From: Mytilus californianus
Taxonomy: Eukaryota
DNA length: 64,000 nt
Assembly: GCF_021869535.1 (NCBI RefSeq)
Contig: NW_026262723.1
Coordinates: forward strand, 83,514,001 to 83,578,000
Reading direction: 5' to 3'
In this document: one piece after another, positions 6,643 to 45,700 of the stretch
Position numbering within the stretch: position 1 is the first letter of the stretch
Layout of the letters: each line of letters begins with the position of its first letter
Notes under the pieces: model-generated
Seen by the model: the letters and a program-made list of their open reading frames with translations, nothing else
Database searches by the model: none
What the model was told of the DNA's origin: nothing
Position numbers and translations under genes: made by a program

Positions 6643-7026
6643 TTATAATCCTGGTACCTTTGATAACTATTTACACCACTGGGTGGATGCCGCTGCTGGT
6701 GAACGTTTCGTCCCCGAGGGTATCACCAGCCCAGAAGTCAGCACTTCGGTGTTGACATGAATATCAATTATATGGTCATTTTTATAAATTTCCTGTTACA
6801 AAACTTTGAATTTTTCGGAAAACTAAGGATTTTCTTATCCCAGGAATAGATTACCTTAGCCGTATTTGGCACAACTTTTTGGAATTTTGGGTCCTCAATG
6901 CTCTTCAACTTTGTACTTGTTTGGCTTTATAACTATTTTGATCTGAGCGTCACTGATGAGTCTTATGTCGACGAAACGCGCGTCTGGCGTATTAAATTAT
7001 AATCCTGGTACCTTTGATAACTATTT
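6643..7026 (+). mobile_element. Retrozyme (non-autonomous ribozyme retroelement): one 354-bp monomer plus a 30-bp terminal direct repeat
   Basis: ttataatcctggtacctttgataactattt at 6643 and 6997 (period 354). Contains a type I hammerhead. Near-identical to 38557-39059. Confidence 0.85.
6947..6990 (+). ncRNA. Type I hammerhead ribozyme (minimal, palindromic stem III)
   Basis: Stem I GCGTCA/TGGCGT; CTGATGA 6953-6959; stem II GTC..GAC; GAAA 6973-6976; C-GCGC-G; GTC cleavage triplet ending 6984. Confidence 0.88.
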
Positions 7027-12944: not shown

Positions 12945-13395
12945 GATCATAATTTAGAAATTGAATTAGGACGTTATAAAAAAATTCAAAGAGAACACAG
13001 ACTGTGCAAAGTTTGTAAAGTTTTAGATGATGAGGAACACTTTTTCCTTCATTGCCAAATTAACAGTAATGTAAGACATTCCCTTATAAATGCAATTAAA
13101 ACCCATTATCCTAATTTTAACCAGCTTGACTCAAACTCTAAACTTAAAACTATTCTAGATCCCAATAAAAATATTTTGTCTAGTGTTGTAGACTATATAA
13201 AGCAATCTATGGAATTGCGAAAATAAGGTCCACATTGGTCAATTATTATATATATATATATATATTATTAATATCAACTTGACTTGTTTAAAACATTTAT
13301 CATGTATTATGTTTCTTGTCACTTGTGTATACAATGTACTATGTTTGCTTTTTAGCCCGCCAGGGTTTCATGTTTTGCAATAAAGTTTATATGTA
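12945..13395 (+). mobile_element. 3' fragment of a non-LTR retrotransposon (C-terminal CCHC-like region)
   Basis: RVSDHNLEIELGRY..RLCKVC..DEEHFFLHC resembles a LINE ORF2 C-terminus; followed by an AT-rich 3' UTR with aataaa. Confidence 0.75.
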
Positions 13396-13404
13396 TACAG
13401 TTTG

Positions 13405-13868
13405 ATCCTTTTTGGTGATATAACTCTTCAACTGTTTCGATTCTTATACAACTTTGGTTCTCAAATATTCGGCTTTGAGTGTTCCTGATGAAGGTAAATC
13501 CAGAAAATCGCTCCGGACCCATGAAATTCATAACGTGTTGTTTTCATTTTTGACAGCACTGGGTCGATACCTCTGCTGGTGGACTATCATTCCCCGAGAG
13601 TATCAACAGCTCAGTAGTCAGTATTTCGGTACTGACATGATTTATTACAAAGTTCTCTAAAATTGTCCGTTTATAAATTTGGAAATTTTAAAGAAACTAA
13701 GGTTCCAACTCCTTCAGGCAGAGTTGAACTTAGATGGATTTGGCAATTTTTAGGTCCTTTTTGGTCATACAACTCTTCAACTGTTTCGGTTCTTACAATA
13801 TTTGGCTAACAGATATTCGGCTTTGAGTGTTCCTGATGAAGATAAATCCTTAAAAGTGCTTCGGACGC
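13405..13868 (+). mobile_element. Retrozyme of a second class (348-bp period) with two degenerate hammerheads
   Basis: CTGATGA at 13485 and 13833 (period 348). The middle is homologous to the 354-bp class (cactgggtcgat...gctggtgga...gtcag..ttcgg..tgacatga). Confidence 0.8.
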
Positions 13869-14210
13869 ATGGAAATATCAAGCAATTAGAAACGAAAGAC
13901 CTACCATTTCTGGCTGACAACAAATGGAAATATCAAGCAAGTAGAAACGAAAGACCTATCATTTCTGGCTGAGGACAAATGGAAATATCAAGCAAGAAGA
14001 AACGAAAGACCTACCATTTTTGGCTGAGGACAAAGGGAAATATCAAGCAAGCACAAACGAAAGACCTACCATTTCTGGCTGAGGACAAATGGAAATATCA
14101 AGCAAGCACAAACGAAAGAACTACCATTTCTGGCTGAGGACAAATGGAAATATCAAGCAAGTACAAACGAAAGACCTATCATTTCTTGCTGAGGACAACT
14201 GAAATATCAA
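13869..14210. repeat. 55-bp minisatellite, ~6 copies
   Basis: Unit atggaaatatcaagcaagtagaaacgaaagacctaccatttctggctgaggacaa at 13869, 13924, 13979, 14034, 14089, 14144. Confidence 0.95.
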
Positions 14211-33724: not shown

Positions 33725-36700
33725 ATGAGTTTACCTAGAGGGGTCGTAAGAAATGAAGATTATTTAGGACTTAAAAGCGAACTTCTCCGGAATAACAAAC
33801 TATTTGTGGATCCTGATTTCTCACCTAGTACATCATCACTTACATTCTCTGGCTTTCAGCCTCGGATTTCAGGAATACGGAGCGTTATTTGGAAACGTCC
33901 CAGGGTGAGTAGCATTTGTTGACATTGTCTTGCTAAATCTTATGAACAGGTGATGAACTAAATGTATATGGTTTTATTTGTCAATATTATAGTTATCGAA
34001 ACTTTACGGGATATTGCACTATATAAAATTAGTTTATTCTCATGTATATATACTAGTAATCAATATCTATATATATCAACATTGGTAGATTTAAACCTTG
34101 GAAGCCTTAAAGAGATTGTAATCAATAATTCGCCGGTGACATATGAGTTTTTTTATGAATCGTTTCAGTAAATTTCTTCCTCGTTTTATAATGGTTCAAT
34201 TGTTAATTTCCGAAATGAAATCGTTATAATATATAATGAACGGAAACAAAAATAAGGAAACTTTATACTTTTGTAAGTTTCCATAACAAAATTGCAGCAA
34301 ACATTGTACTTTCTATGGTGGCTTTGCTATCAGATTTTACATTGCAAAAATTTAATTATTGATATGTGTCATTGACAAATAAAAATATTATAACTATATA
34401 TCAGATGAAACGAAAAACTGGTTTCGTCTATGATAAACCAGTAATAGTATGGATGTCTCAATGTAGAATCTGCTCAAAGTAGAACTTACATGTAAATGAT
34501 AACAAAACAAAACAAAAACTACATTCTACCAGACAATAATTGCTGCCTTGTGCCAGATTTAAGTCTAATTCAATAGCCAGATGTACAGATCGACAGACGT
34601 TTAAATAATTAATTTGTATTGCACCTGAACTAAAGATTTTTTTTTCAGGTTTTTCAGACATTAATTTTCAATATAAAAGTGAGGTTATAACAAACAAACC
34701 AGCATAAATTTTCTTTATTGTCAAACCTATTTTCTATTCATTTTTATTCGAATGTTACCGATTTTCGTTGATTTCGTGGCTATAGGAAACACGAATGAAA
34801 TGTTCAAATAACTTTAGATTGTCTGTAGTTTGCATACTAACATTTTCAAAACCACTAAATCAAATATCCACGAAAATACATTTTTCCCCATTCCACGAAT
34901 ATACATTTTTTCCCCAATCCACGAAAATACAATTTTTCCCCAATCCACGAAAATACATTTTTTTCCCAATCCACGAAAATTGGTAATAACGAAAATAAAT
35001 GAATCCACGGTATTGCTTTAATTAATGCCAAAAAACAACGCGTTGGAAATACAACCTCTTAGGAGGTAGCTAGAATATACACATAAAGCACTCTACCTTC
35101 CTTACAAAATCGACATCCGATTTCTTTTTATTTTTTTATCTGTTGAAGAATCCAGACATCCATGGGTCACACACTATAATACCATTGTGTATTTTGCTGA
35201 TTGGTTTATTGATTGTTGAATATTTGAAGTCCAGTGACAATTATTTCATGCATTTTCAGGACGAGTGGTTTCTTGAAAATAGCATTTTTTTTTACTTCGA
35301 CATTTGTAATCTATGCATATTCAGACGGTACATCTATAAGATATATATAAATATAGCCAGGAAAAAAATAACTTTTTATTGTTTTGTATCAAAAGAGCTA
35401 CATACCAAGTTTATGTTTTATGTCACACCTTTCAATAGGATGTTAAGGTATACAAATAAAGGTCACGTTATCTATTGATCTTTTTGATTTTCGTTTACTA
35501 TAAAGCAAAATGTATATTATACAAATCATTAACATTCTTTGCAAGTCCTTTGTTTTTTAAGTCCATATTTTTCAAAAAAATATTTTTTAAAATGTCGACG
35601 TTATTGCCGACTATGCACATCACAAATTGTGACGCAAAAATAGACTTTGCCGCCCACATGTAATGCGGCGTTCACACATTGCCGATTATGGCTCCCGTTT
35701 GAGATCAGATAGCGCTAAGACACGAAAAGTTTAAAAATCGGATCACTATCCTCATTGATCTGGAATGTCCTAACATTGTCTTAACGAAGTCGTATAGGTT
35801 CGTAACAGTTTCGTACGGATCGGATATGGTCCGGAGAGGTCGGCCAAGCACACCGAGAGGTAGGTGCGTCCCGTAACATTCGGGGAAACTCAGCCGATTT
35901 TGTCTAGTCGGAAAACAATCTTAACTATATCGTGACAGATTCTGATGTATCGTATTGAAATCGTAACCACGTTCTGTGTTTTCTGGACGTTGTCCTCTGG
36001 AACGTGCGTGATCTGGAGAAATTTGTCATTGCTGTCATTTTGCCGATTGAGTCCAGATTGCATCCAGATCTTGCTGAATGCGAACCGTCTCTGCCGAAAC
36101 CGTTGCGGAAAAATCACGTTATTGATACGAAATTCGACAATGATACCCACGTCAGAGTCCCGACACTGAATTACAGAACACAATACGACTGAGTCCAGAT
36201 AAAGCCGTGTGCAATGCAGTACAGCAGGCTGTGGTAGGATTGCATTCCGACAGTACCTGATCATCCCGAATATGGCGACAGTTTTCTAACGGATATTTTC
36301 CGTCAGCGTCGGTTCACTGTCTGGTCACTGTCTGATGATCTCTGTCGGATCACATTCGGTAAAATCGGGACGCTGTCGGGTCAGATTCGGTCGTTTTGTA
36401 CCATGCAAAAGATACAAATCGGATTAGAATCGGATTAGAATCGGATTGAGAACGGGATAATCGGGACAAATTCGGTTGGAAACGGCTGGATTTGGACGCT
36501 TCCTGAACAATATCTGATTGTTGTCGTGATTCAATAAATGTTTTTACAAATTATAATTAAAGTCTGAATTTCCTGCCACGATTCACAGGATCTTGATCAG
36601 ACTTTTGACAAATTTTAATCGGGAATGGTCCTGTCAAGGACGGCAGTAAAAATCGTGAATGTGTGACCCCAGCTTAACTGCAAAATGTCATGAAAATGTC

Positions 36701-39700
36701 AACGTCATATTTAAATAACATTTTTATTATTTTTTTAAATATAATTGCTGATGTTGTCATTAAGTCCCAAAAACGGAGATTTTATTATTGTTCTTCCTAC
36801 TAATATTATTTCATTATCATATTAGTAAAAAAAGACCAATCGTCCAGATGATGAATCGAATGGTGACCCCCACTTCAAAATTATTAGATATATCTGTCTC
36901 ATGAATCTAAGTGACAAATTACTACTGTCGTAGATTTATTGTCATATTTACTATTTCACACTTTCATGAAATATTATTTTTATCACCAGTTTTTATTGCC
37001 GAGGGATCTTCTGAGACAAAATGATGAATATGCGATTGTGTTAATGAGGATGCTAGTAAACTGTGTATGGTTTCTAATACATGTGATTTAATTAAACTCT
37101 AGGGTCACATCAATTTGTAGAAAGACAGCCTTATCTTGTACTGAATCTTCTAGCACAACGCAGAAGCCTTTTTATTAGAATTCAGATTCAAAATGCTAAC
37201 CAAATAAGCTATAGACCAACATGCAATATAGATTGGTTCAATCGAATTAATATATAGATCTCTGATTTCGTTATCTTATATTTACGAACAGGCGAGTTAA
37301 TATAGGTCATAGTTTTAATCAGATTGAAGTTGGTTCAGAAATCCACAAACGAGTTTTTCTACATATGTCGTGTCGACTTCAATGTGAAATTAAGTCAACT
37401 ATGGTCGTACTTAGGTTGGGCAGTCGGAATTCAAGCTTCAATTTTGTCTTTTACTTCAAAGTAGGCGGTCGAAACAGTTTTCATTCAATAAAAAGTGAAT
37501 GGTTTCTGTATGTTTGAAACAAAACAAAGTATCTCTTCTCTCACCGAAGGTGGTTTACCGTAAACTGTATGACACTACCATGTTTTGAACTTCGTTCAGA
37601 CACCACTGAACGTTAAGGGCATACGATACAGTTTTGATCCCACGGTGAATTTTTGACTTCTGTAATAACATCTGTAAGTTCATCTCTACAGAAATGTGCT
37701 TTGAATTTGTGTAACACTTCTTTGGAAATGATTCATTTATTCACATTTTCATGATTGTAGTAAAAAAAAACGACATTTTTTGCTGTAAATTTATCAAACT
37801 TAAAAAAAATTTCATCGGTGATTTGTTTATAAATATTGGCACAAATAATCTTCATACATAATCAAGCCAAATGTCATTTTTAAAAAGAAGGGTCCATGAA
37901 CTCGTTTTGAAGTTAAATCAGTCTGAATAATAAAAATAGTCGAAAAATACATCTTTCCCCGATATGTCACAGTTTAACGTCGGGAAAAAATAACATTTTA
38001 TGTTAGCAACATCATTACCTCCCCTTTTTAACTGTATCGTATGCCCTCGCGTATGCCCTTAAAGCCCAATTCAATGTCTTGTCGAACCTGGGTTATTGTG
38101 GTGCTGATTTTAGTGCATATTTAGTGAGCTGCGCGTATAATCAACAACAGATGTTTGAACCTATGTATAATACTTTTTATCAACTTAGTTATGATTTTGA
38201 CCTTATATGTCGGGACTATGATGGCAATAAACCATATATCAACTCTTATATGTTACGCTGGGGACTTTACTGAAACTAAGGAACAGCTTACGAAAGGCAG
38301 TATGATGATACAACTTTTGTTCACACTCAAATAAAGAAAACATAGGTTTTTTTTTCAGGTTTCTGGATCTTCATATGAATGTTTTTATAATTCAGTGTTA
38401 TAATAAGAAGGAAGACTTGTTCATTGTTTCCTTATTTAGTCTGATGGAACTAATTTATAAAACACGGACGTCCTTTCCGTCTTGAAATTAATGCCTGACA
38501 ACACAAAGGTCCAAATTCAAATCAATCATATATATGCACACACGATTGCTCGTATCTTTTGGAATTTTGGGTCCTCAATGCTCTTCAACTTTGTACTTGT
38601 TTGGCTTTATAACTATTTTGATCTGAGCGTCACTGATGAGTTTTATGTAGACGAAACGCGCGTCTGGCGTATTAAATTATAATCCTGGTACCTTTGATAA
38701 CTATTTACACCACTGGGTCGATGCCGCTGCTGGTGGACGTTTCGTCCTCGAGGGTATCACCAGCCCAGTAGTCAGCACTTCGGTGTTGACATGAATATCA
38801 ATTATATGGTCATTTTTATAAATTTCCTGTTACAAAACTTTGAATTTTTCGGAAAACTAAGGATTTTCTTATCCCAGGAATAGATTACCTTAGCCGTATT
38901 TGGCACAACTTTTTGGAATTTTGGGTCCTCAATGCTCTTCAACTTTGTACTTGATTGGATTTATAACTATTTTGATCTGAGCGTCACTGATGAGTCTTAT
39001 GTAGACGAAACGCGCGTCTGGTGTATTAAATAATAATCCTGGTACCTTTGATAACTATTATAGGATCAGTAAAACAGAGACACATATATAGTACTTAAAG
39101 TCGGTCATCATTTCATTCCCTTGACCCTTGAACACTAGAAACCGATTCCATTGGGTGTTTGGTCAAGTTTTTAACAAAGGAAGACAAACGATAGCCATAC
39201 AACTTAAACTAAGTAACATGAGCCTAACAAACACTTGCCACTTCCCCAATATTAAAAACAGATTTATCATATATATACTAGTATGAAGATTCAGCCATAT
39301 GTATTGATTGATTGATTGTTGCTTGTTTAACGTCAGTGGCAAATATTTCATGTATATTTTAGAAGGTTCTGGAGAAAAACTATAACTAATACACATTAGA
39401 ATGCACTGATAGGGACGAAAAGCAAAGAATTTAGTTATGTTCCTTTTACAATAATATTCCGTTTGTTTTCTTGGTATAGCAAAGTCTACTTCGTGTACAA
39501 CCATACATTATTTTATCATTTTTACTAAAGATGCGTATCAATGCGTGATATGCTTATTTTTTTGTAGCATACTTTGAATTGCTTAGGCTTTGTTCTATAT
39601 ATGTCACAGTAGGTCTCAGAAGATTAAGCATTGTAAGCACTGCTTGCAAAGTAGCTAAGCTCATAAGGGCATAGATTAAGGTCGTGTTATGAGGGTCGTA

Positions 39701-42700
39701 ATGGGGGTACCTTCATGACGAACAACGGTAAAAAATCCTACCAAATGACGTTAACGGTAATTTTTGGTGCATGACGAAAAAATGTACATTTTCTTTATGA
39801 CGATAAAAAAAAAATCGACTGATTTTGACGAATCACGTTAATTTTTTTCCAAAAATAACGGTAACGGATAATTATTTAAGACCTTTGACGAATCACGTTA
39901 ATTTTTTTCCAAAAATAACGGTAACGGATAATTATTTAAGACCTCTGACGAATCACGATAGGGATATTTTGACGAATCACGATAAAATTTTAACCGATTT
40001 GACGCTAACGATAGCTGAAAATGACCGTTTGACGCATACAATGCTTTATTCTTTGATTCGCATAGTATACATTTCCTTCCAGGACCTGGTTGTCAACCCT
40101 AGATTCGTAAAAGCCGGACTTTCAAGGCATGATTTATACCAAGGAGTTTTAGGTGAGTCAGATAGAGATGGTTTGAAACAAATGGTATTTACATTAGTTT
40201 TACTAATGGTTAGTGAAACAAAGATGATATATTATACTTGATTAGGAAAGGGATGTTACTTTTACAACCAATTATGTGAAGAAAAAGAACCTGGTTCACA
40301 ATACTATCCTTCATCTGCTTTGTTTTATTAACAGTGCTATGTTGTTAAGTTTGTAGTCACACACCCTATAACCAGCTATCCTACAACAGAAAGAATAGTA
40401 CCCGTGTTCCCGATTGCCAATTAGAACCATTGCTTTTTTAGCTCACCTGGCCGAAAGGCCAAGTGAGCTTATCTCATCACTTGGCGTCCGTCTCCGTCGT
40501 CGTCGTCCGTCGTCGCCGTCGTTAACTTTTACAAAAATCTTCTTCTCTGAAACTACTGGGCCAAATTTAACCAAACTTGGCCATAATAATTATTGGGGTA
40601 TTTAGTTTTAAAAATGTGTCCGATGACCCCGCCAGCCAACCAAGATGGCTGACATGGCTAAAAATAGAAGATATGGGTAAAATGCAAGTTTTGCCTATTA
40701 TTTTGAAAACCAATATAAATAGAGAAAATCTGACACGAACAAAAATATTCCTAATGTTGAGCTCTACCTATTGTTTATTCACGTCAAAACTGTCAAACGA
40801 CTTCTTATAGGAGTTATTGCCCTTAAAAGATGAAGTTTACCATTTTTAAAAATTGTTGCCTATTATCTCGAAAATTATAATAGATAAACAGAAACTTTAA
40901 ATAGCAAAAATGATCAGCAAGACAAGATCTACAAATAAGCCTATTGGCCGAAATCTTAAGTCGACTCGTTATTTCCCTTTGAGGATAATTTTTAACATTT
41001 TTTTGCATTTTTTGCCTATTATCTTGAAAACAATAATAGATAAATAGAAACTTTAGAAAGGAAAATTATCTGCAGGATAAGATCTACAAATATGTCAACA
41101 TGACTGAAATTGTCAGTTATCTTTTAATAGAGTTATTCCCCTTCAATGATGATTTTTACTAAAAAGTGGCTATTGTTGAAGATGCAGGTCTTAAGAGCCT
41201 TTAGTTTCTATAGTGTATGCAGATTTTTGACTGGCGTTCCGATAGCCATTGAATCCGGTTGTACAATGCGGCTGGTTTTGATCTGTTTTGATACCTGTTA
41301 CATCTGCAGTACCGATAACCGATAATAATATTGTGTGCAAACCTGTGTCCATATTCACAGTTACATTTTCATTGACCATTGACCTGTACAACTACTCACG
41401 AAATCGTTTTAAAGTAAAGATGTTAGGAAATGATACCACGAGGACATTATTTATATAATAAGGAGATGTGGTATGATTGCCAATAAGACGACTACTATCC
41501 ACCAGAGATTGTTTGATTGAATAATCGCTTAACGTCCAGTGGCAAATATGTCATGCATCTACATATTTTCCCATAGTAGATCAAGAAATATAAAATAACA
41601 GATATTTAATTGAAGTGAAATCACTATAAAGTTTGTACTAGAGAAGAAAGTTAAGTAGGCATTGAATATTAAAGCGTATTAATCATCATGCAGTTAATGT
41701 TATATATATGTATATATGTCAAATTTCCTAATTGAGAAACGTGATACAACATCAAACACCGCTCGAGCTGAGCCATAAATGTGATGCTGTGTTAGACTAT
41801 ATAATTACATGGTTGAGATCGTACACCTAAGCAGTCATNNNNNNNNNNNNNNNNNNNNNNNNNNNNNNNNNNNNNNNNNNNNNNNNNNNNNNNNNNNNNN
41901 NNNNNNNNNNNNNNNNNNNNNNNNNNNNNNNNNNNNNNNNNNNNNNNNNNNNNNNNNNNNNNNNNNNNNNNNATGATATAGGCTATCCTTTCATAGACGT
42001 CTTCTTTGATTTATTATGTTGTTGGGCTGTTGTCTCTTTCGTTAGATACTTTACAGTCCTTTATTCACAAAATAAGTTTTTTTTTTCTTTCCGTTTATAT
42101 TTTCTTTCACAAGCTATTTATATGTTGAAATATTTCAGGAAACTGTTGGTTCATAGCAGGGGCAGCTGTGGTTTCTACTATACCTAAATTATTGTTTAGA
42201 TGTGTACCAACAGACCAGGACTTTGACAAAGACTATGCAGGTATGTTTAGATGTGTACTAATAGACCAAGACTTTGACAAAGACAATGTAGGTATGTTTA
42301 GATGTCTACCAATAGACCAAGACTTTGCCAAGACTATGCAGGTATGTTTAGATGTGTATCAATAGATCAAGACTTTGACAAAGACTATGCAGTTATGTTT
42401 AGATGTGTACCAATAGACCAAGATGTTGACAAAGACTATGCAGGTATGTTTAGATGTGTACTAATAGACCAAGACTTTGACAAAGACAATGTAGGTATGT
42501 TTAGATGTCTACCAATAGACCAAGACTTTGCCAAGACTATGCAGGTATTTTTAGATGTGTATCAATAGATCAAGACTTTGACAAAGACTATGCAGTTATG
42601 TTTAGATGCGTACCAATAGACCAAGATGTTGACATAGACTATGCAGGTATGTTTAGATGTGTACCAACAGATCAAGACTTTGACATAGACTATGCAGGTA

Positions 42701-45700
42701 TGTTTAGATGTGTACCAACAGATCAAGACTTTGACAAAGACAATGCAGGTATGTTTAGATGTGTACCAACAGATCAAGACTTTGACAAAGACTATGCAGG
42801 TATGTTTAGATGTGTACCAACAGATCAAGATGTTGACAAAGACTACTGGTATTTATGATTTTTAAATAGATGTCATTGCATAAAATGTAAGAAACATACT
42901 GGAATTAACAGCAAGGATTAAACAAAGGGAATTTCATAAATTTAAGAAATGTACAGAAAGGATTAGCAGGTATTGAAATGGGAAAACTTGAGCTGACTGG
43001 TTTACTGGAAGACCCTTTAGGAAAATTCTGTTCTGTCCTGACTTTTTTCTGCTGGAGCCTTAATGAAAAGTTTATGATATTATGACCTGACTGCATATAT
43101 TTCTGATGGAACCCATGTGGAATAAGTTTCATGATCGAAATCATCTATTGATCCCTTATAGGAGTTATTGCCCTTGAAAGATGATTTTTACAATTTTTTT
43201 TAGTTTTTTGCAGAAACTATCATAGATAGAGTGAAACTTTACATGGCAAAAATTGTTCAGCAAAGTAAGACCTACAAATGAATCGACATGACTGAAATTG
43301 TCAATTAAACCCTTATAGGAATTAATACCCTTGCAAGACAATTTTTTGTTTTTGTTTGCAGGAACTATGACAGATAGAAACTTCAACAACAAAAATGTTC
43401 AGCAAAGTTAGACCTACAGACTGAAAATGTTAATTGACACCTTATAGTTTTCCCCTTCAAAGACTATTCTTACCATTGTTTTTGTTTTTTGAAGAAACTA
43501 TGATAAAAACTTTAAATAACAAAAATGTTCAGAAAAGTAATAACTACAAATAAGTCAAGACCTACAAATAAGACATGACCGAAATCGTCAATTGATCCCT
43601 GATAGGAGTTATTGCCCTTGAAAGAAGATTTTTACCCATTTTTTTAGTTTTTAGCAGAAACTATGATAGATACAGAGAATCTTTAAAATCCAATATTGAT
43701 CAGCAAAGTAAGACCTACAAATAGTCAAATAACCAACATTGTCAATTAACTCCTTATATTAAAGAGTTATTGCCCTTAAAAGATATTTTTTTCCATTTTT
43801 TTTTGGTTTTTTGAATAAACTATTATAGATAGAGAGAAAATTTAAATGGCATGTTCAAACATGCATTAATATACATTAAATAGAAAAATAATCATTGATG
43901 CAAGATCTTCACATAAAATTCCAGGTGAGGGATTCAGGCTCTTAGGAGCCTCTAGTTTAGTACATGGACACCTTTTTCTTCCTATATAGTTTTAGCAAAT
44001 TGATGACATTGATGCAATTATGATCAACAATCAAAGAAAAGTGTCCCGTTATAAAAATGATGCAGGAAAATGTCCTTTTCTTTCCTTCCAAATTTAGATA
44101 ATAACATAACTATTTTTTACAGGTTTATTTCATTTTAACTTTTGGTGGTATGGTAAATGGGTGGAGGTCATCATTGATGATTTGCTACCAACAGATGGCA
44201 TGCAGCTGATATATGCCAGAAACAGGAGTGATCCAGATGAATTTTGGCCAGCCCTCCTAGAGAAAGCTTATGCTAAGTATGTTACTTTGTGTAATGTGAT
44301 ATATCAAGTTGTAAGTTGTTATGGTCAAATTGCTTTTACTTTTTACAGGGTAACAGATACAGAACTATAGATTTTTGTAGAACTGTGATAATGTTTTTTT
44401 TTTTAAATTATTTTTGCTTGTTTTATTTATGAATTGGAGGTAGGGTCCTCTTCCTCACTGATAATACTTATATTTACACTTTGTATAGTGTTTCTTGCTC
44501 TCTTACATATACCAGGGGTATACTATTGCTTCACATTTTGTAGATTGCGAGGTAATTATGAAGCATTAGATGGTGGAAAATTACAGGATGCCATAGTAGA
44601 TATGACTGGTTCAATATCAGAATATATCGACCTGAAAGACAAATCAAAGATACCAAATAATTTATATGATCTAGTATGGAAAAGTTATCAGATGAATTCC
44701 TTGATGGGTGCTAGTATTCATGTAAGTTATTGGCAAAATTTAAATTAGATGAATATTTTTTAACACTCCAGAAATTGCTGATACATACATTTATAAATTG
44801 AAGCAATGATTGTTTTACTCCCCAATAGCTAGCATTGTATCTTTTAAAGATAATCAATGAACTTTGACTGAAAAGTAGATAATTTTGTTGAATAGAAATG
44901 TTCTTTATTGTTTATTTGTCAATAATTAATCAGATACATGTATGCTTAATAGATAACTTTACGGAGGAGTTTCGGTGACAGATGTTTGTGTGCCTACATT
45001 TTTAATTCACATTGTCTACATGATTTTTAAGTGTTCTAACTGTTTGAGTTCAATTTGAACAGTAAGCATTGATTTATATTTTTACTGGATGTAGATATGT
45101 GGTAATAGTATCACTATAAACAGTCCATCATGTCCCAACTCTGGCTTTAATGTGAGTATAGTCACATACTCAATACCCACATATATATGTAACTTTAACC
45201 TGAACCATAACCTACTAGTTCCTATAAAGAGAAAGATGACTGTACAAAATACATATGAAATGGTGGCTGGGATATTTTGTAGTTGCCAGAAAATTCCAAA
45301 ACACCAGAAGTTGAGATGACCAATGGTTTGTTCATGGGACATGCTTACAGCATAACAGGAATTGCTTCGGTATGTTTATAGAGATTTTTTGATAATTAGG
45401 TCCGAGTACACAGTTATTTCGTAGTGCATTTCTTTTAGACAATAAATGAAAATAAAAAAAATCCCACCTGCGCTTTCTCAATAATATTTTTACAGTGTGT
45501 TGTACTACTTTTGGGACAAATTATATCAAAATTATAGAAAACTTCATCGGCTCTAACTCAAAATATGGACAATTCTATGTTAAGGGGGTCTTGAAATCTT
45601 TTGACAGCTTCCGAAGTGCTAATTTTTAACCTTTTTCAGCTGGACCAAATCACTACTTTACTTTACAATTCATGACCCAAATTATTTTACAGTGTAATTT

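What the first reader, a model, noticed from the sequence alone, without database searches (positions are those of the whole stretch)
38557..39059. Complete double-hammerhead retrozyme in sense orientation inside calpain intron 1
Seen: two hammerheads with intact cores exactly 354 nt apart, on the same strand as the calpain pre-mRNA (intron 33905-40082). Established: minimal type I hammerheads with palindromic stem III cleave efficiently as tandem dimers and release monomers that circularise. Inference: calpain transcription could generate a 354-nt (circular) RNA without its own promoter, and co-transcriptional cleavage could compete with exon 1-2 splicing. The insertion would then be a cis-regulatory, probably polymorphic, modifier of calpain expression.
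Basis: partly seen in the sequence, partly recalled or inferred. Interest (0 to 1): 0.7.

Follow-up and report, generated by a model that had tools for sequence, protein, structure and literature searches.

The report
Ordinary mussel retrozyme copy in intron
The two self-cutting hammerhead RNA motifs are real, but they belong to one slightly worn copy of a mussel jumping element that was described in 2020 and has thousands of copies, and nothing found here shows that it affects the calpain gene whose intron it sits in.

Summary
Two type I hammerheads lie on the + strand at 38627-38670 and 38981-39024. They would cut after C38664 and C39018, exactly 354 nt apart. They sit in a 503-bp element (38557-39059) of 1.42 head-to-tail units. 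The element is sense-oriented in the 6,178-nt first coding intron (33905-40082) of a + strand calpain gene.

It is a member of the published Mytilus non-LTR retrozyme family (Cervera & de la Peña 2020, construct Mg353). This genome holds 4,686 exact matches to the hammerhead, 2,346 of them in this subfamily.

Like 30 other arrays examined, it ends about 41 nt past a cleavage site and is truncated at the 5' end. That is the signature of a retro-copy.

The regulatory reading has no support:
- The copy's private substitutions weaken a helix in each flanking hammerhead.
- None of about 34 RNA reads over the private markers carries this locus's letters, and the intron flanks have zero RNA depth.
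- The insertion is not recent. It also appears in contigs of another sample of the same species, and its 3' junction appears under a second species label.
- The family cleaves slowly, at about 0.1 per min.

Earlier notes of this scan report several sense-oriented intronic retrozymes elsewhere in this genome. The element is already known, and interest is low.

The parts
38557..39059 (+). Whole retrozyme insertion: 503 bp, 1.42 head-to-tail units, 38% G+C, no ORF longer than 66 aa
   Evidence: The flanks 38050-38556 and 39060-39300 are single-copy in the genome.
38557..38664 (+). 5'-truncated partial unit (unit positions 247-354) carrying most of the first hammerhead
   Evidence: Own BLAST of the monomer against the loci. 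5' ends vary among 31 arrays.
38627..38670 (+). Type I hammerhead 1, predicted cut between 38664 and 38665. A private C>T at 38642 turns a C-G pair of helix II into U-G.
   Evidence: Rfam RF00163 at 30.1 bits. The private letter is seen in 1 of 87 aligned family segments. The catalytic fold scores -3.1 kcal/mol against -5.7 for the family type.
38665..39018 (+). Full 354-nt monomer that double cleavage would release. Its private markers are T38748, A38954 and A38959.
   Evidence: The linear fold is no more stable than shuffles (z = -0.11).
38712..38790 (+). Best-conserved internal domain: a long imperfect hairpin (38712-38769) plus a UUCG-capped hairpin (38771-38790)
   Evidence: These are the only parts kept in the centroid fold. 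They are the best-conserved stretch in the diverged relative at 13.5 kb, which has one two-sided pair change (C-G to U-A) in the UUCG hairpin. The same stretch is present in the published Mg353 construct.
38981..39024 (+). Type I hammerhead 2, predicted cut between 39018 and 39019. A private C>T at 39022 turns a C-G pair of helix I into U-G.
   Evidence: Rfam RF00163 at 31.1 bits. The private letter is seen in 3 of 88 aligned family segments. The catalytic fold scores -0.9 kcal/mol against -5.7 for the family type.
39019..39059 (+). 3' tail (unit positions 1-41), the fixed 3' terminus shared by the family's insertions
   Evidence: 28 of the 31 arrays listed end at unit position 40-45, two at 48-50 and two at 28-29.
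33725..33904 (+). Calpain coding exon 1 (ATG at 33725, 60 codons)
   Evidence: Peptidase_C2 profile positions 1-32
33905..40082 (+). Host intron, GT...AG, 6,178 nt. The element starts 4,652 nt from the donor. Its cleavage sites lie 1,418 and 1,064 nt before the acceptor.
40083..40154 (+). Calpain coding exon 2
   Evidence: profile positions 34-56. RNA depth is about 8 with the first mate on the - strand, which is as expected for a + strand mRNA in most stranded libraries.

Best explanation
This is an ordinary passenger copy of the known Mytilus non-LTR retrozyme, the roughly 350-nt family whose members are transcribed, cut by their hammerheads, ligated into circular RNA and copied back into DNA. 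The copy was made by reverse transcription that started at a fixed point about 41 nt past the cleavage site, on a circular or multimeric template. It ran 1.42 times round and stopped, leaving a 5'-truncated unit, one full unit and the 41-nt tail. It landed in the sense direction in the first coding intron of a calpain gene, is no longer young, and has picked up six private substitutions. Two of these weaken a helix of each flanking hammerhead. If calpain pre-mRNA or the excised lariat is cut here at all, the cut is slow and mostly follows commitment to splicing. The contribution to the cell's large retrozyme RNA pool would be negligible, and no effect on calpain expression is expected. Shown: the anatomy, family membership, copy number, shared termini, private changes, presence in other samples and absence of locus-marked RNA reads. 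Inferred: the copying mechanism and the lack of effect on the host gene.
For: Hammerheads and 354-nt spacing. Family size: the monomer search gave 2,522 first-look candidates, and the scored ones are mostly 94-98% identical, on many chromosome-sized contigs and often in arrays. There are 4,686 exact hammerhead matches and 2,346 of this subfamily, with none in the reversed controls. The published M. galloprovincialis family has about 5,000 type I hammerheads in 350-390-bp repeats, two hammerhead variants, kobs about 0.1 per min, abundant circRNA and RtcB-type ligation (PMC7229834). The Mg353 construct in its supplement shows the same hammerhead apart from loop 2, and the same central domain. 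Retro-copy signature: a fixed 3' end at unit position about 41-45 and scattered 5' ends in 31 arrays of 0.5-7.75 units. Age: all 5 arm-to-arm differences are private to this locus. Presence elsewhere: contigs of run X2 reach 27 nt into the element at both junctions with no mismatch, and a contig of X9 (another species label) covers 39034-39330 with 1 difference. RNA: 0 of 10 reads carry T38748, 0 of 24 carry A38954 and 0 of 20 carry A38959. The intron flanks are at depth 0 and exon 2 at about 8.
Against: The RNA test is weak. Only about 6% of one run was read and the library's selection method is unknown. With about 2,300 sibling units, an average copy would contribute far fewer than one of the roughly 34 informative reads. 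The data therefore exclude only a share above about 8% of the family RNA, not any expression at all. The junction contigs reach 27 nt into the repeat, which is below the tool's 31-nt bridging rule, and contigs drop rare alleles, so an empty allele is not excluded. Both hammerhead cores are intact and the helix changes are wobble pairs, so cleavage may still occur. No target-site duplication was found and no autonomous partner with a matching end was identified, so the copying mechanism remains inferred.
Confidence: 0.88

Rival explanations
1. One reading: calpain transcription drives the element, the two hammerheads cut the nascent intron, and this competes with exon 1-2 splicing. The insertion would then be a polymorphic cis-modifier of calpain expression.
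For: Sense orientation, intact cores and a complete monomer between two cleavage sites. There is a precedent: the intronic CPEB3 ribozyme lowers expression of its host gene, and its half-life is matched to the transcription time to the next exon (PMC10919898). A fast ribozyme in an intron abolishes splicing (Fong et al. 2009, as cited in PMC2995048). In Xenopus, retrozymes are mildly depleted from introns (bioRxiv 10.64898/2026.07.22.740005).
Against: The family's rate of about 0.1 per min (PMC7229834) gives a half-life of about 7 min, whereas only 1.1-1.4 kb remain to the acceptor. Slow hammerhead cleavage of an intron left splicing intact. Both flanking hammerheads carry helix-weakening private changes. 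There are no locus-marked reads and no intron-flank reads. The insertion has about 1.7% post-insertion change per site and is seen in two further samples, with no empty site listed. About 43% of Xenopus retrozymes are intronic, and earlier notes report other sense intronic copies in this genome.
Confidence: 0.04
2. The copy is a silent but productive circRNA source: host read-through or the excised lariat yields the 354-nt circle in useful amounts without affecting calpain.
For: The geometry allows it. Family RNA is present in the RNA run on both strands, and the promoter of the family is unknown (PMC7229834).
Against: None of about 34 informative reads carries the locus markers, and the intron flanks have zero depth. 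The 3' hammerhead's catalytic fold is predicted to be barely stable, at -0.9 kcal/mol. Calpain exon depth is modest in the sample read.
Confidence: 0.06
3. It is not a retro-copy but a small piece of satellite DNA, duplicated locally by slippage or unequal crossing-over.
For: The units are tandem head-to-tail. No target-site duplication or poly(A) was found. Some arrays are long, up to 7.75 units.
Against: Thousands of dispersed copies on many contigs share the same 3' end and have scattered 5' ends. The flanks are unique. The family's circular RNAs and the proposed cDNA route are published (PMC7229834).
Confidence: 0.02

Closest known systems
Mytilus galloprovincialis non-LTR retrozyme (construct Mg353; HHR A/B variants), Cervera & de la Peña, Nucleic Acids Res 2020 (PMC7229834)
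   Same: It has the same hammerhead: identical core, helix II stem and ACGCGCGU helix III. The unit is about 350 nt with low G+C, the units lie head-to-tail, and the central domain is the same. The genome-wide count of about 4,700 motifs compares with about 5,000 published.
   Different: Loop 2 reads UUAUG here and UUUUG in the cloned Mg353. The roughly 40 nt after the cleavage site also differ, so this is the sister variant of the one cloned.
Amphibian satellite 2 / axolotl retrozymes (type I hammerheads that act as double hammerheads)
   Same: Type I topology, a very short helix III closed by a palindromic tetraloop, units of 330-350 nt, and circRNA products.
   Different: According to PMC7229834, the amphibian motifs have a single base pair in helix III and need dimers for good rates. 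Invertebrate motifs like this one have two pairs and cleave as single motifs. There is no sequence similarity outside the core.
Penelope-like elements (PLEs) with minimal hammerheads in their terminal repeats
   Same: Partial tandem insertions, 5' truncation, type I hammerheads and co-occurrence in the genome. GIY-YIG copies are abundant here (1,480 first-look candidates), including a family with an intact 755-aa frame in 3,927-bp tandems.
   Different: The PLE family sampled carries a different hammerhead, with a GGUGCC/GGCACC helix II and a CAUG loop, and shows no other similarity to this retrozyme. No parent or partner was identified.
Intronic self-cleaving ribozymes with a host-gene role (CPEB3 HDV-like ribozyme; conserved mammalian intronic hammerheads)
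   Same: A sense-strand self-cleaving motif inside an intron of a protein-coding gene.
   Different: Those are single-copy and conserved at orthologous positions, and the CPEB3 ribozyme's rate is matched to its distance from the next exon. This one is a multicopy transposon insertion with a slow motif close to the acceptor and no sign of conservation for function.

Membership tests
Hammerhead ribozyme, type I (Rfam RF00163) | Conserved catalytic core: C3 U4 G5 A6 N7 G8 A9, G12 A13 A14, the A15.1-U16.1 pair, and H17 at the cleavage site | tested here: met
   Read directly: CUGAUGA at 38633-38639, GAAA at 38653-38656, A38656-U38663 and C38664. The second motif has the same at +354.
Hammerhead ribozyme, type I (Rfam RF00163) | Three helices with helix I open (type I), scoring at or above the curated gathering score | tested here: inconclusive
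   The full-length model match has the right topology, but scores 30.1 and 31.1 bits against a gathering score of 34. Helix I has 6 pairs including wobbles, helix II has 4 pairs, and helix III has 2 pairs plus a GCGC loop. The catalytic fold is not the predicted minimum-energy fold of the isolated motif.
Hammerhead ribozyme, type I (Rfam RF00163) | Self-cleavage activity | not testable with these tools
   Cleavage was shown for a sister genomic copy of the family (kobs about 0.1 per min, PMC7229834), not for this copy.
Metazoan non-LTR retrozyme | Head-to-tail repeats of 150-450 bp, each carrying a type I hammerhead | tested here: met
   A 354-nt unit in 1.42 copies here, and 0.5-7.75 units at other loci
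Metazoan non-LTR retrozyme | Low G+C (<45-50%), no LTR/PBS/PPT, no coding capacity | tested here: met
   G+C is 38%. The only terminal repeat is the overlap of the units. The longest ORF touching the element is 66 aa. PBS and PPT were not searched for formally.
Metazoan non-LTR retrozyme | Many dispersed genomic copies | tested here: met
Metazoan non-LTR retrozyme | Expressed as linear and circular monomer RNA | tested here: inconclusive
   Family-level reads are present in RNA run X21, but none is attributable to this locus. Circularity cannot be seen on a reference that already holds 1.4 units. Circles are shown for the family in PMC7229834.
Mytilus Mg353-type retrozyme family | Sequence homology to the published construct | tested here: met
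   Compared by eye with the construct printed in the paper's supplement. The hammerhead is identical apart from loop 2, and the central domain shares long identical runs.

The most novel reading that the evidence does not exclude
The sense-oriented dimer is cut in calpain pre-mRNA often enough to lower or modulate exon 1-2 splicing, or to seed a locus-specific 354-nt circRNA. It would then be a natural example of a transposon-borne hammerhead acting as a cis-regulator of an animal gene.
Probability: 0.04. Interest if true: 0.55.

Novelty: already known. Interest (0 to 1): 0.12.

Why it matters
It matters little as a discovery. The element family, its ribozyme, its circular RNAs and its likely retrotransposition route were published in 2020, and intronic copies are common. 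There are two small useful points. First, for this 354-nt subfamily the insertions share a fixed 3' end about 41 nt past the cleavage site and have variable 5' ends. This fits priming at one site on a circular or multimeric RNA. Second, the copy has private markers (T38748, A38954, A38959) that would allow a locus-specific test of whether host-gene read-through feeds retrozyme circles. A measurable effect of such copies on host genes would be of moderate interest for transposon-host biology.

Tried and rejected
- The Rfam gathering scan of the whole window found nothing. The motifs fall just below the curated threshold and appear only in the E-value scan.
- My first motif pattern had the wrong spacer length and found nothing. 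It was corrected.
- BLAST suggested that several arrays begin exactly at the cleavage site, which would have pointed to a self-cleaved linear template. Reading the flanks showed 9-21 more element bases upstream in each case, so I dropped that idea.
- A simple search for target-site duplications found nothing convincing.
- The monomer fold is no more stable than shuffled sequence (z = -0.11). The isolated hammerheads do not fold into the catalytic shape as their minimum-energy structure. Thermodynamic prediction therefore neither supports nor refutes activity.
- I looked for a second, empty copy of the site in the assembly. Both flanks are single-copy.
- I looked for an autonomous partner via GIY-YIG copies. 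The PLE family sampled has an unrelated hammerhead and no shared terminus.
- I attempted covariation analysis of the internal domain. Only two diverged relatives were at hand, which is too few.
- A genome-wide test of orientation bias in introns was not possible without gene annotation.
- The joined exon model of calpain was not searched.
- The N stretch near 41.8-42.0 kb was left alone.

Full report
**Observation**

The + strand carries two type I hammerheads. Rfam Hammerhead_1 matches its full model at 38627-38670 (30.1 bits) and at 38981-39024 (31.1 bits), with E about 1e-5 on the 801 nt searched. Both scores are under the curated gathering score of 34, so the default whole-window scan reported nothing.

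Read directly, the first motif has:
- helix I at 38627-38632 / 38665-38670;
- CUGAUGA at 38633-38639;
- helix II at 38640-38643 / 38649-38652, with a 5-nt loop;
- GAAA at 38653-38656;
- helix III of two pairs (A38656-U38663 and C38657-G38662) closing a GCGC loop;
- C17 at 38664.

The second motif is the same, shifted by 354. The predicted cuts therefore fall after 38664 and after 39018.

The 32-nt motif occurs three times in the window and never in 100 shuffles. The third occurrence is at 6953-6984. The flanking direct repeat, 38557-38705 against 38911-39059, is 97% identical at a spacing of 354. It has 5 differences in 149 positions.

**Host gene**

A calpain gene lies on the + strand.
- Exon 1 runs from the ATG at 33725 to 33904 and is followed by GTGAGT.
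- The acceptor AG ends at 40082, and exon 2 is 40083-40154.
- Four exon pieces, searched one by one by reference, match Pfam Peptidase_C2 collinearly at profile positions 1-32, 34-56, 103-140 and 142-195.

The element is therefore sense-oriented in a 6,178-nt intron. It starts 4,652 nt from the donor, and its cleavage sites lie 1,418 and 1,064 nt before the acceptor. Whether this is literally intron 1 depends on 5'-UTR exons that I did not examine.

**What it is**

The 354-nt monomer finds 2,522 first-look candidates in the window's own 1.65-Gb genome. The scored candidates are mostly 94-98% identical. They lie on many chromosome-sized contigs, often in arrays. The hammerhead pattern has 4,686 exact matches against 0 for the reversed control. 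The hammerhead plus the first 21 nt of its tail has 2,346 matches at up to 2 mismatches.

This is the mussel retrozyme of Cervera & de la Peña 2020 (PMC7229834). That paper reports:
- about 5,000 type I hammerheads in repeats of 350-390 bp in Mytilus galloprovincialis;
- two hammerhead variants, with 2,880 and 1,681 motifs;
- co-transcriptional cleavage at about 0.1 per min;
- abundant circular RNA in gonad and mantle;
- circularisation by an RtcB-type ligase rather than by the ribozyme.

The Mg353 construct printed in the paper's supplement has the same hammerhead apart from loop 2, and the same central domain (compared by eye). The copy in the window belongs to the sister variant, with loop 2 UUAUG. 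Earlier notes of this scan call the genome a mussel and report many retrozyme arrays in it. I used these as leads only.

**How the copy arose**

I mapped the monomer on 30 other loci and on the window. The 31 arrays listed hold 0.5 to 7.75 units.
- Their 3' ends are fixed. 28 of the 31 arrays end at unit position 40-45, in the sequence ending GATAACTATT(T). Two more end at 48-50, probably by chance extension. Two are shorter, ending at 28-29.
- Their 5' ends are scattered across the unit.
- BLAST suggested that several arrays begin exactly at the cleavage site. The flanks showed 9-21 more element bases upstream in each case, so there is no excess of starts at the cut.
- I found no convincing target-site duplication.

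A fixed 3' end, 5' truncation and passage through the 354/1 junction fit reverse transcription primed at one place on a circular or multimeric RNA. This is the model proposed in PMC7229834. A 2026 preprint attributes the copying to Penelope-like elements in vertebrates (10.64898/2026.07.22.740005).

GIY-YIG copies are abundant in this genome, with 1,480 first-look candidates. They include a family with an intact 755-aa frame in 3,927-bp tandems. That family's hammerhead and terminus are unrelated to this retrozyme, so no partner was identified.

**State of this copy**

Six positions differ from nearly all of the family segments aligned from the other fetched loci: 38642T, 38748T, 38954A, 38959A, 39022T and 39032A. 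All five differences between the two arms are among them. The arms were therefore identical at insertion, and the copy has since changed at about 1.7% of sites.

Two of the private changes hit hammerhead helices:
- 38642 turns a C-G pair of helix II into U-G in the first motif;
- 39022 turns a C-G pair of helix I into U-G in the second motif.

The nearest-neighbour energy of the catalytic secondary structure falls from -5.7 kcal/mol for the family type to -3.1 and -0.9 kcal/mol. Such energies ignore tertiary contacts, so this is a hint of weakening and no proof of inactivity. The palindromic ACGCGCGU of helix III can pair between the two motifs, as in a double hammerhead.

**Reads**

In RNA run X21, about 6% of the run was read.
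- The intron flanks (38000-38538 and 39078-39231) have depth 0.
- Exon 2 has depth about 8 with the first mate on the - strand. This is as expected for a + strand mRNA in most stranded libraries.
- Reads do pile on the element, but 501 of 509 fit only in part.
- At the markers inside the monomer, every read carries the family letter: 10 of 10 at 38748, 24 of 24 at 38954 and 20 of 20 at 38959.
- About 140 of the reads come from a transcript elsewhere that holds only a 52-nt terminal fragment (38656-38707).

This test excludes the locus as a major source, with an upper bound of about 8% of family RNA from about 34 independent reads. It cannot exclude an average contribution of about 1 in 2,000.

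In DNA contigs:
- a second sample of the same species (X2) covers 38000-38583 and 39033-39329 with no difference;
- a run under another species label (X9) covers 39034-39330 with one difference.

These contigs reach 26-27 nt into the repeat, just under the tool's 31-nt bridging rule. However, both flanks are single-copy in the genome. No joint skipping 38557-39059 was among those listed. 'Probably polymorphic' is therefore not supported, though an empty allele is not excluded.

**Would cutting matter?**

The CPEB3 ribozyme shows that an intronic ribozyme can lower host expression when its half-life matches the transcription time to the next exon (PMC10919898). Two other results, as summarised in PMC2995048, point the other way. 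A hammerhead that cut an intron left splicing as efficient as before (Dye et al. 2006). Only a fast ribozyme abolished splicing (Fong et al. 2009).

The family rate of about 0.1 per min gives a half-life of about 7 min under in vitro conditions. Only 1.1-1.4 kb remain to the acceptor. I infer that most cleavage, if any, follows commitment to splicing.

In Xenopus, about 43% of retrozymes overlap introns. Earlier notes of this scan report several sense intronic copies elsewhere in this genome, none with a shown effect (unchecked by me).

**Verdict**

The element is an ordinary, somewhat worn member of a published family. The cis-regulatory reading rests on possibility alone, and the evidence available leans against it. 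Novelty: already known. Interest: low.

Noticed in passing
window 6643-7026 (+): A second copy of the same retrozyme subfamily, 1.08 units long, with a single hammerhead (6953-6984, helix II variant GUCG). It has the same 3' end as the calpain copy and is 98% identical to its monomer.
   Followed up: partly
window ~13395-13900 (+): An old, diverged relative (71-81% identity) with the same 1.4-unit layout. It has two decayed hammerhead-like motifs 348 nt apart, at 13485 and 13833. The central hairpin domain is its best-conserved part, and one pair of the UUCG hairpin changed on both sides (C-G to U-A). It lies between the two sugar-acid dehydratase genes noted by earlier readers.
   Followed up: partly
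window 39690-40078, with a 60-nt tandem duplication at 39824-39943: The 390 nt just upstream of the exon 2 acceptor belong to another very high-copy repeat, with contig word depths of 10^4-10^5 in three DNA runs. Some RNA reads also fall on it. A second, moderately repeated stretch lies at 39232-39385.
   Followed up: no
L036-L055 (e.g. G000:C110:55838761-55862602): A Penelope-like element family with an intact 755-aa frame, in tandem at 3,927-bp spacing. A minimal hammerhead (helix II GGUGCC/GGCACC, CAUG loop) lies about 1.1 kb downstream of the start of the GIY-YIG match. It is unrelated in sequence to the 354-nt retrozyme.
   Followed up: partly
RNA run X21, reads fitting only window 38656-38707: About 140 reads come from a transcript elsewhere in the genome that contains only the last 9 nt of the hammerhead plus the 43-nt tail. 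This is a strongly 5'-truncated retrozyme insertion inside something well expressed.
   Followed up: no
window ~41830-41976: A masked N stretch inside the calpain gene. It lies between exon 2 and the exon at 44161, where the catalytic-cysteine part of the domain (profile positions 57-102) should be.
   Followed up: no
L056 (G000:C2:28707926-28711192): A decayed GIY-YIG copy with a 0.5-unit retrozyme insertion 700 nt upstream and two diverged (74-80%) retrozyme-like stretches downstream. This may be chance proximity or a hint of a related Penelope-like terminus.
   Followed up: no
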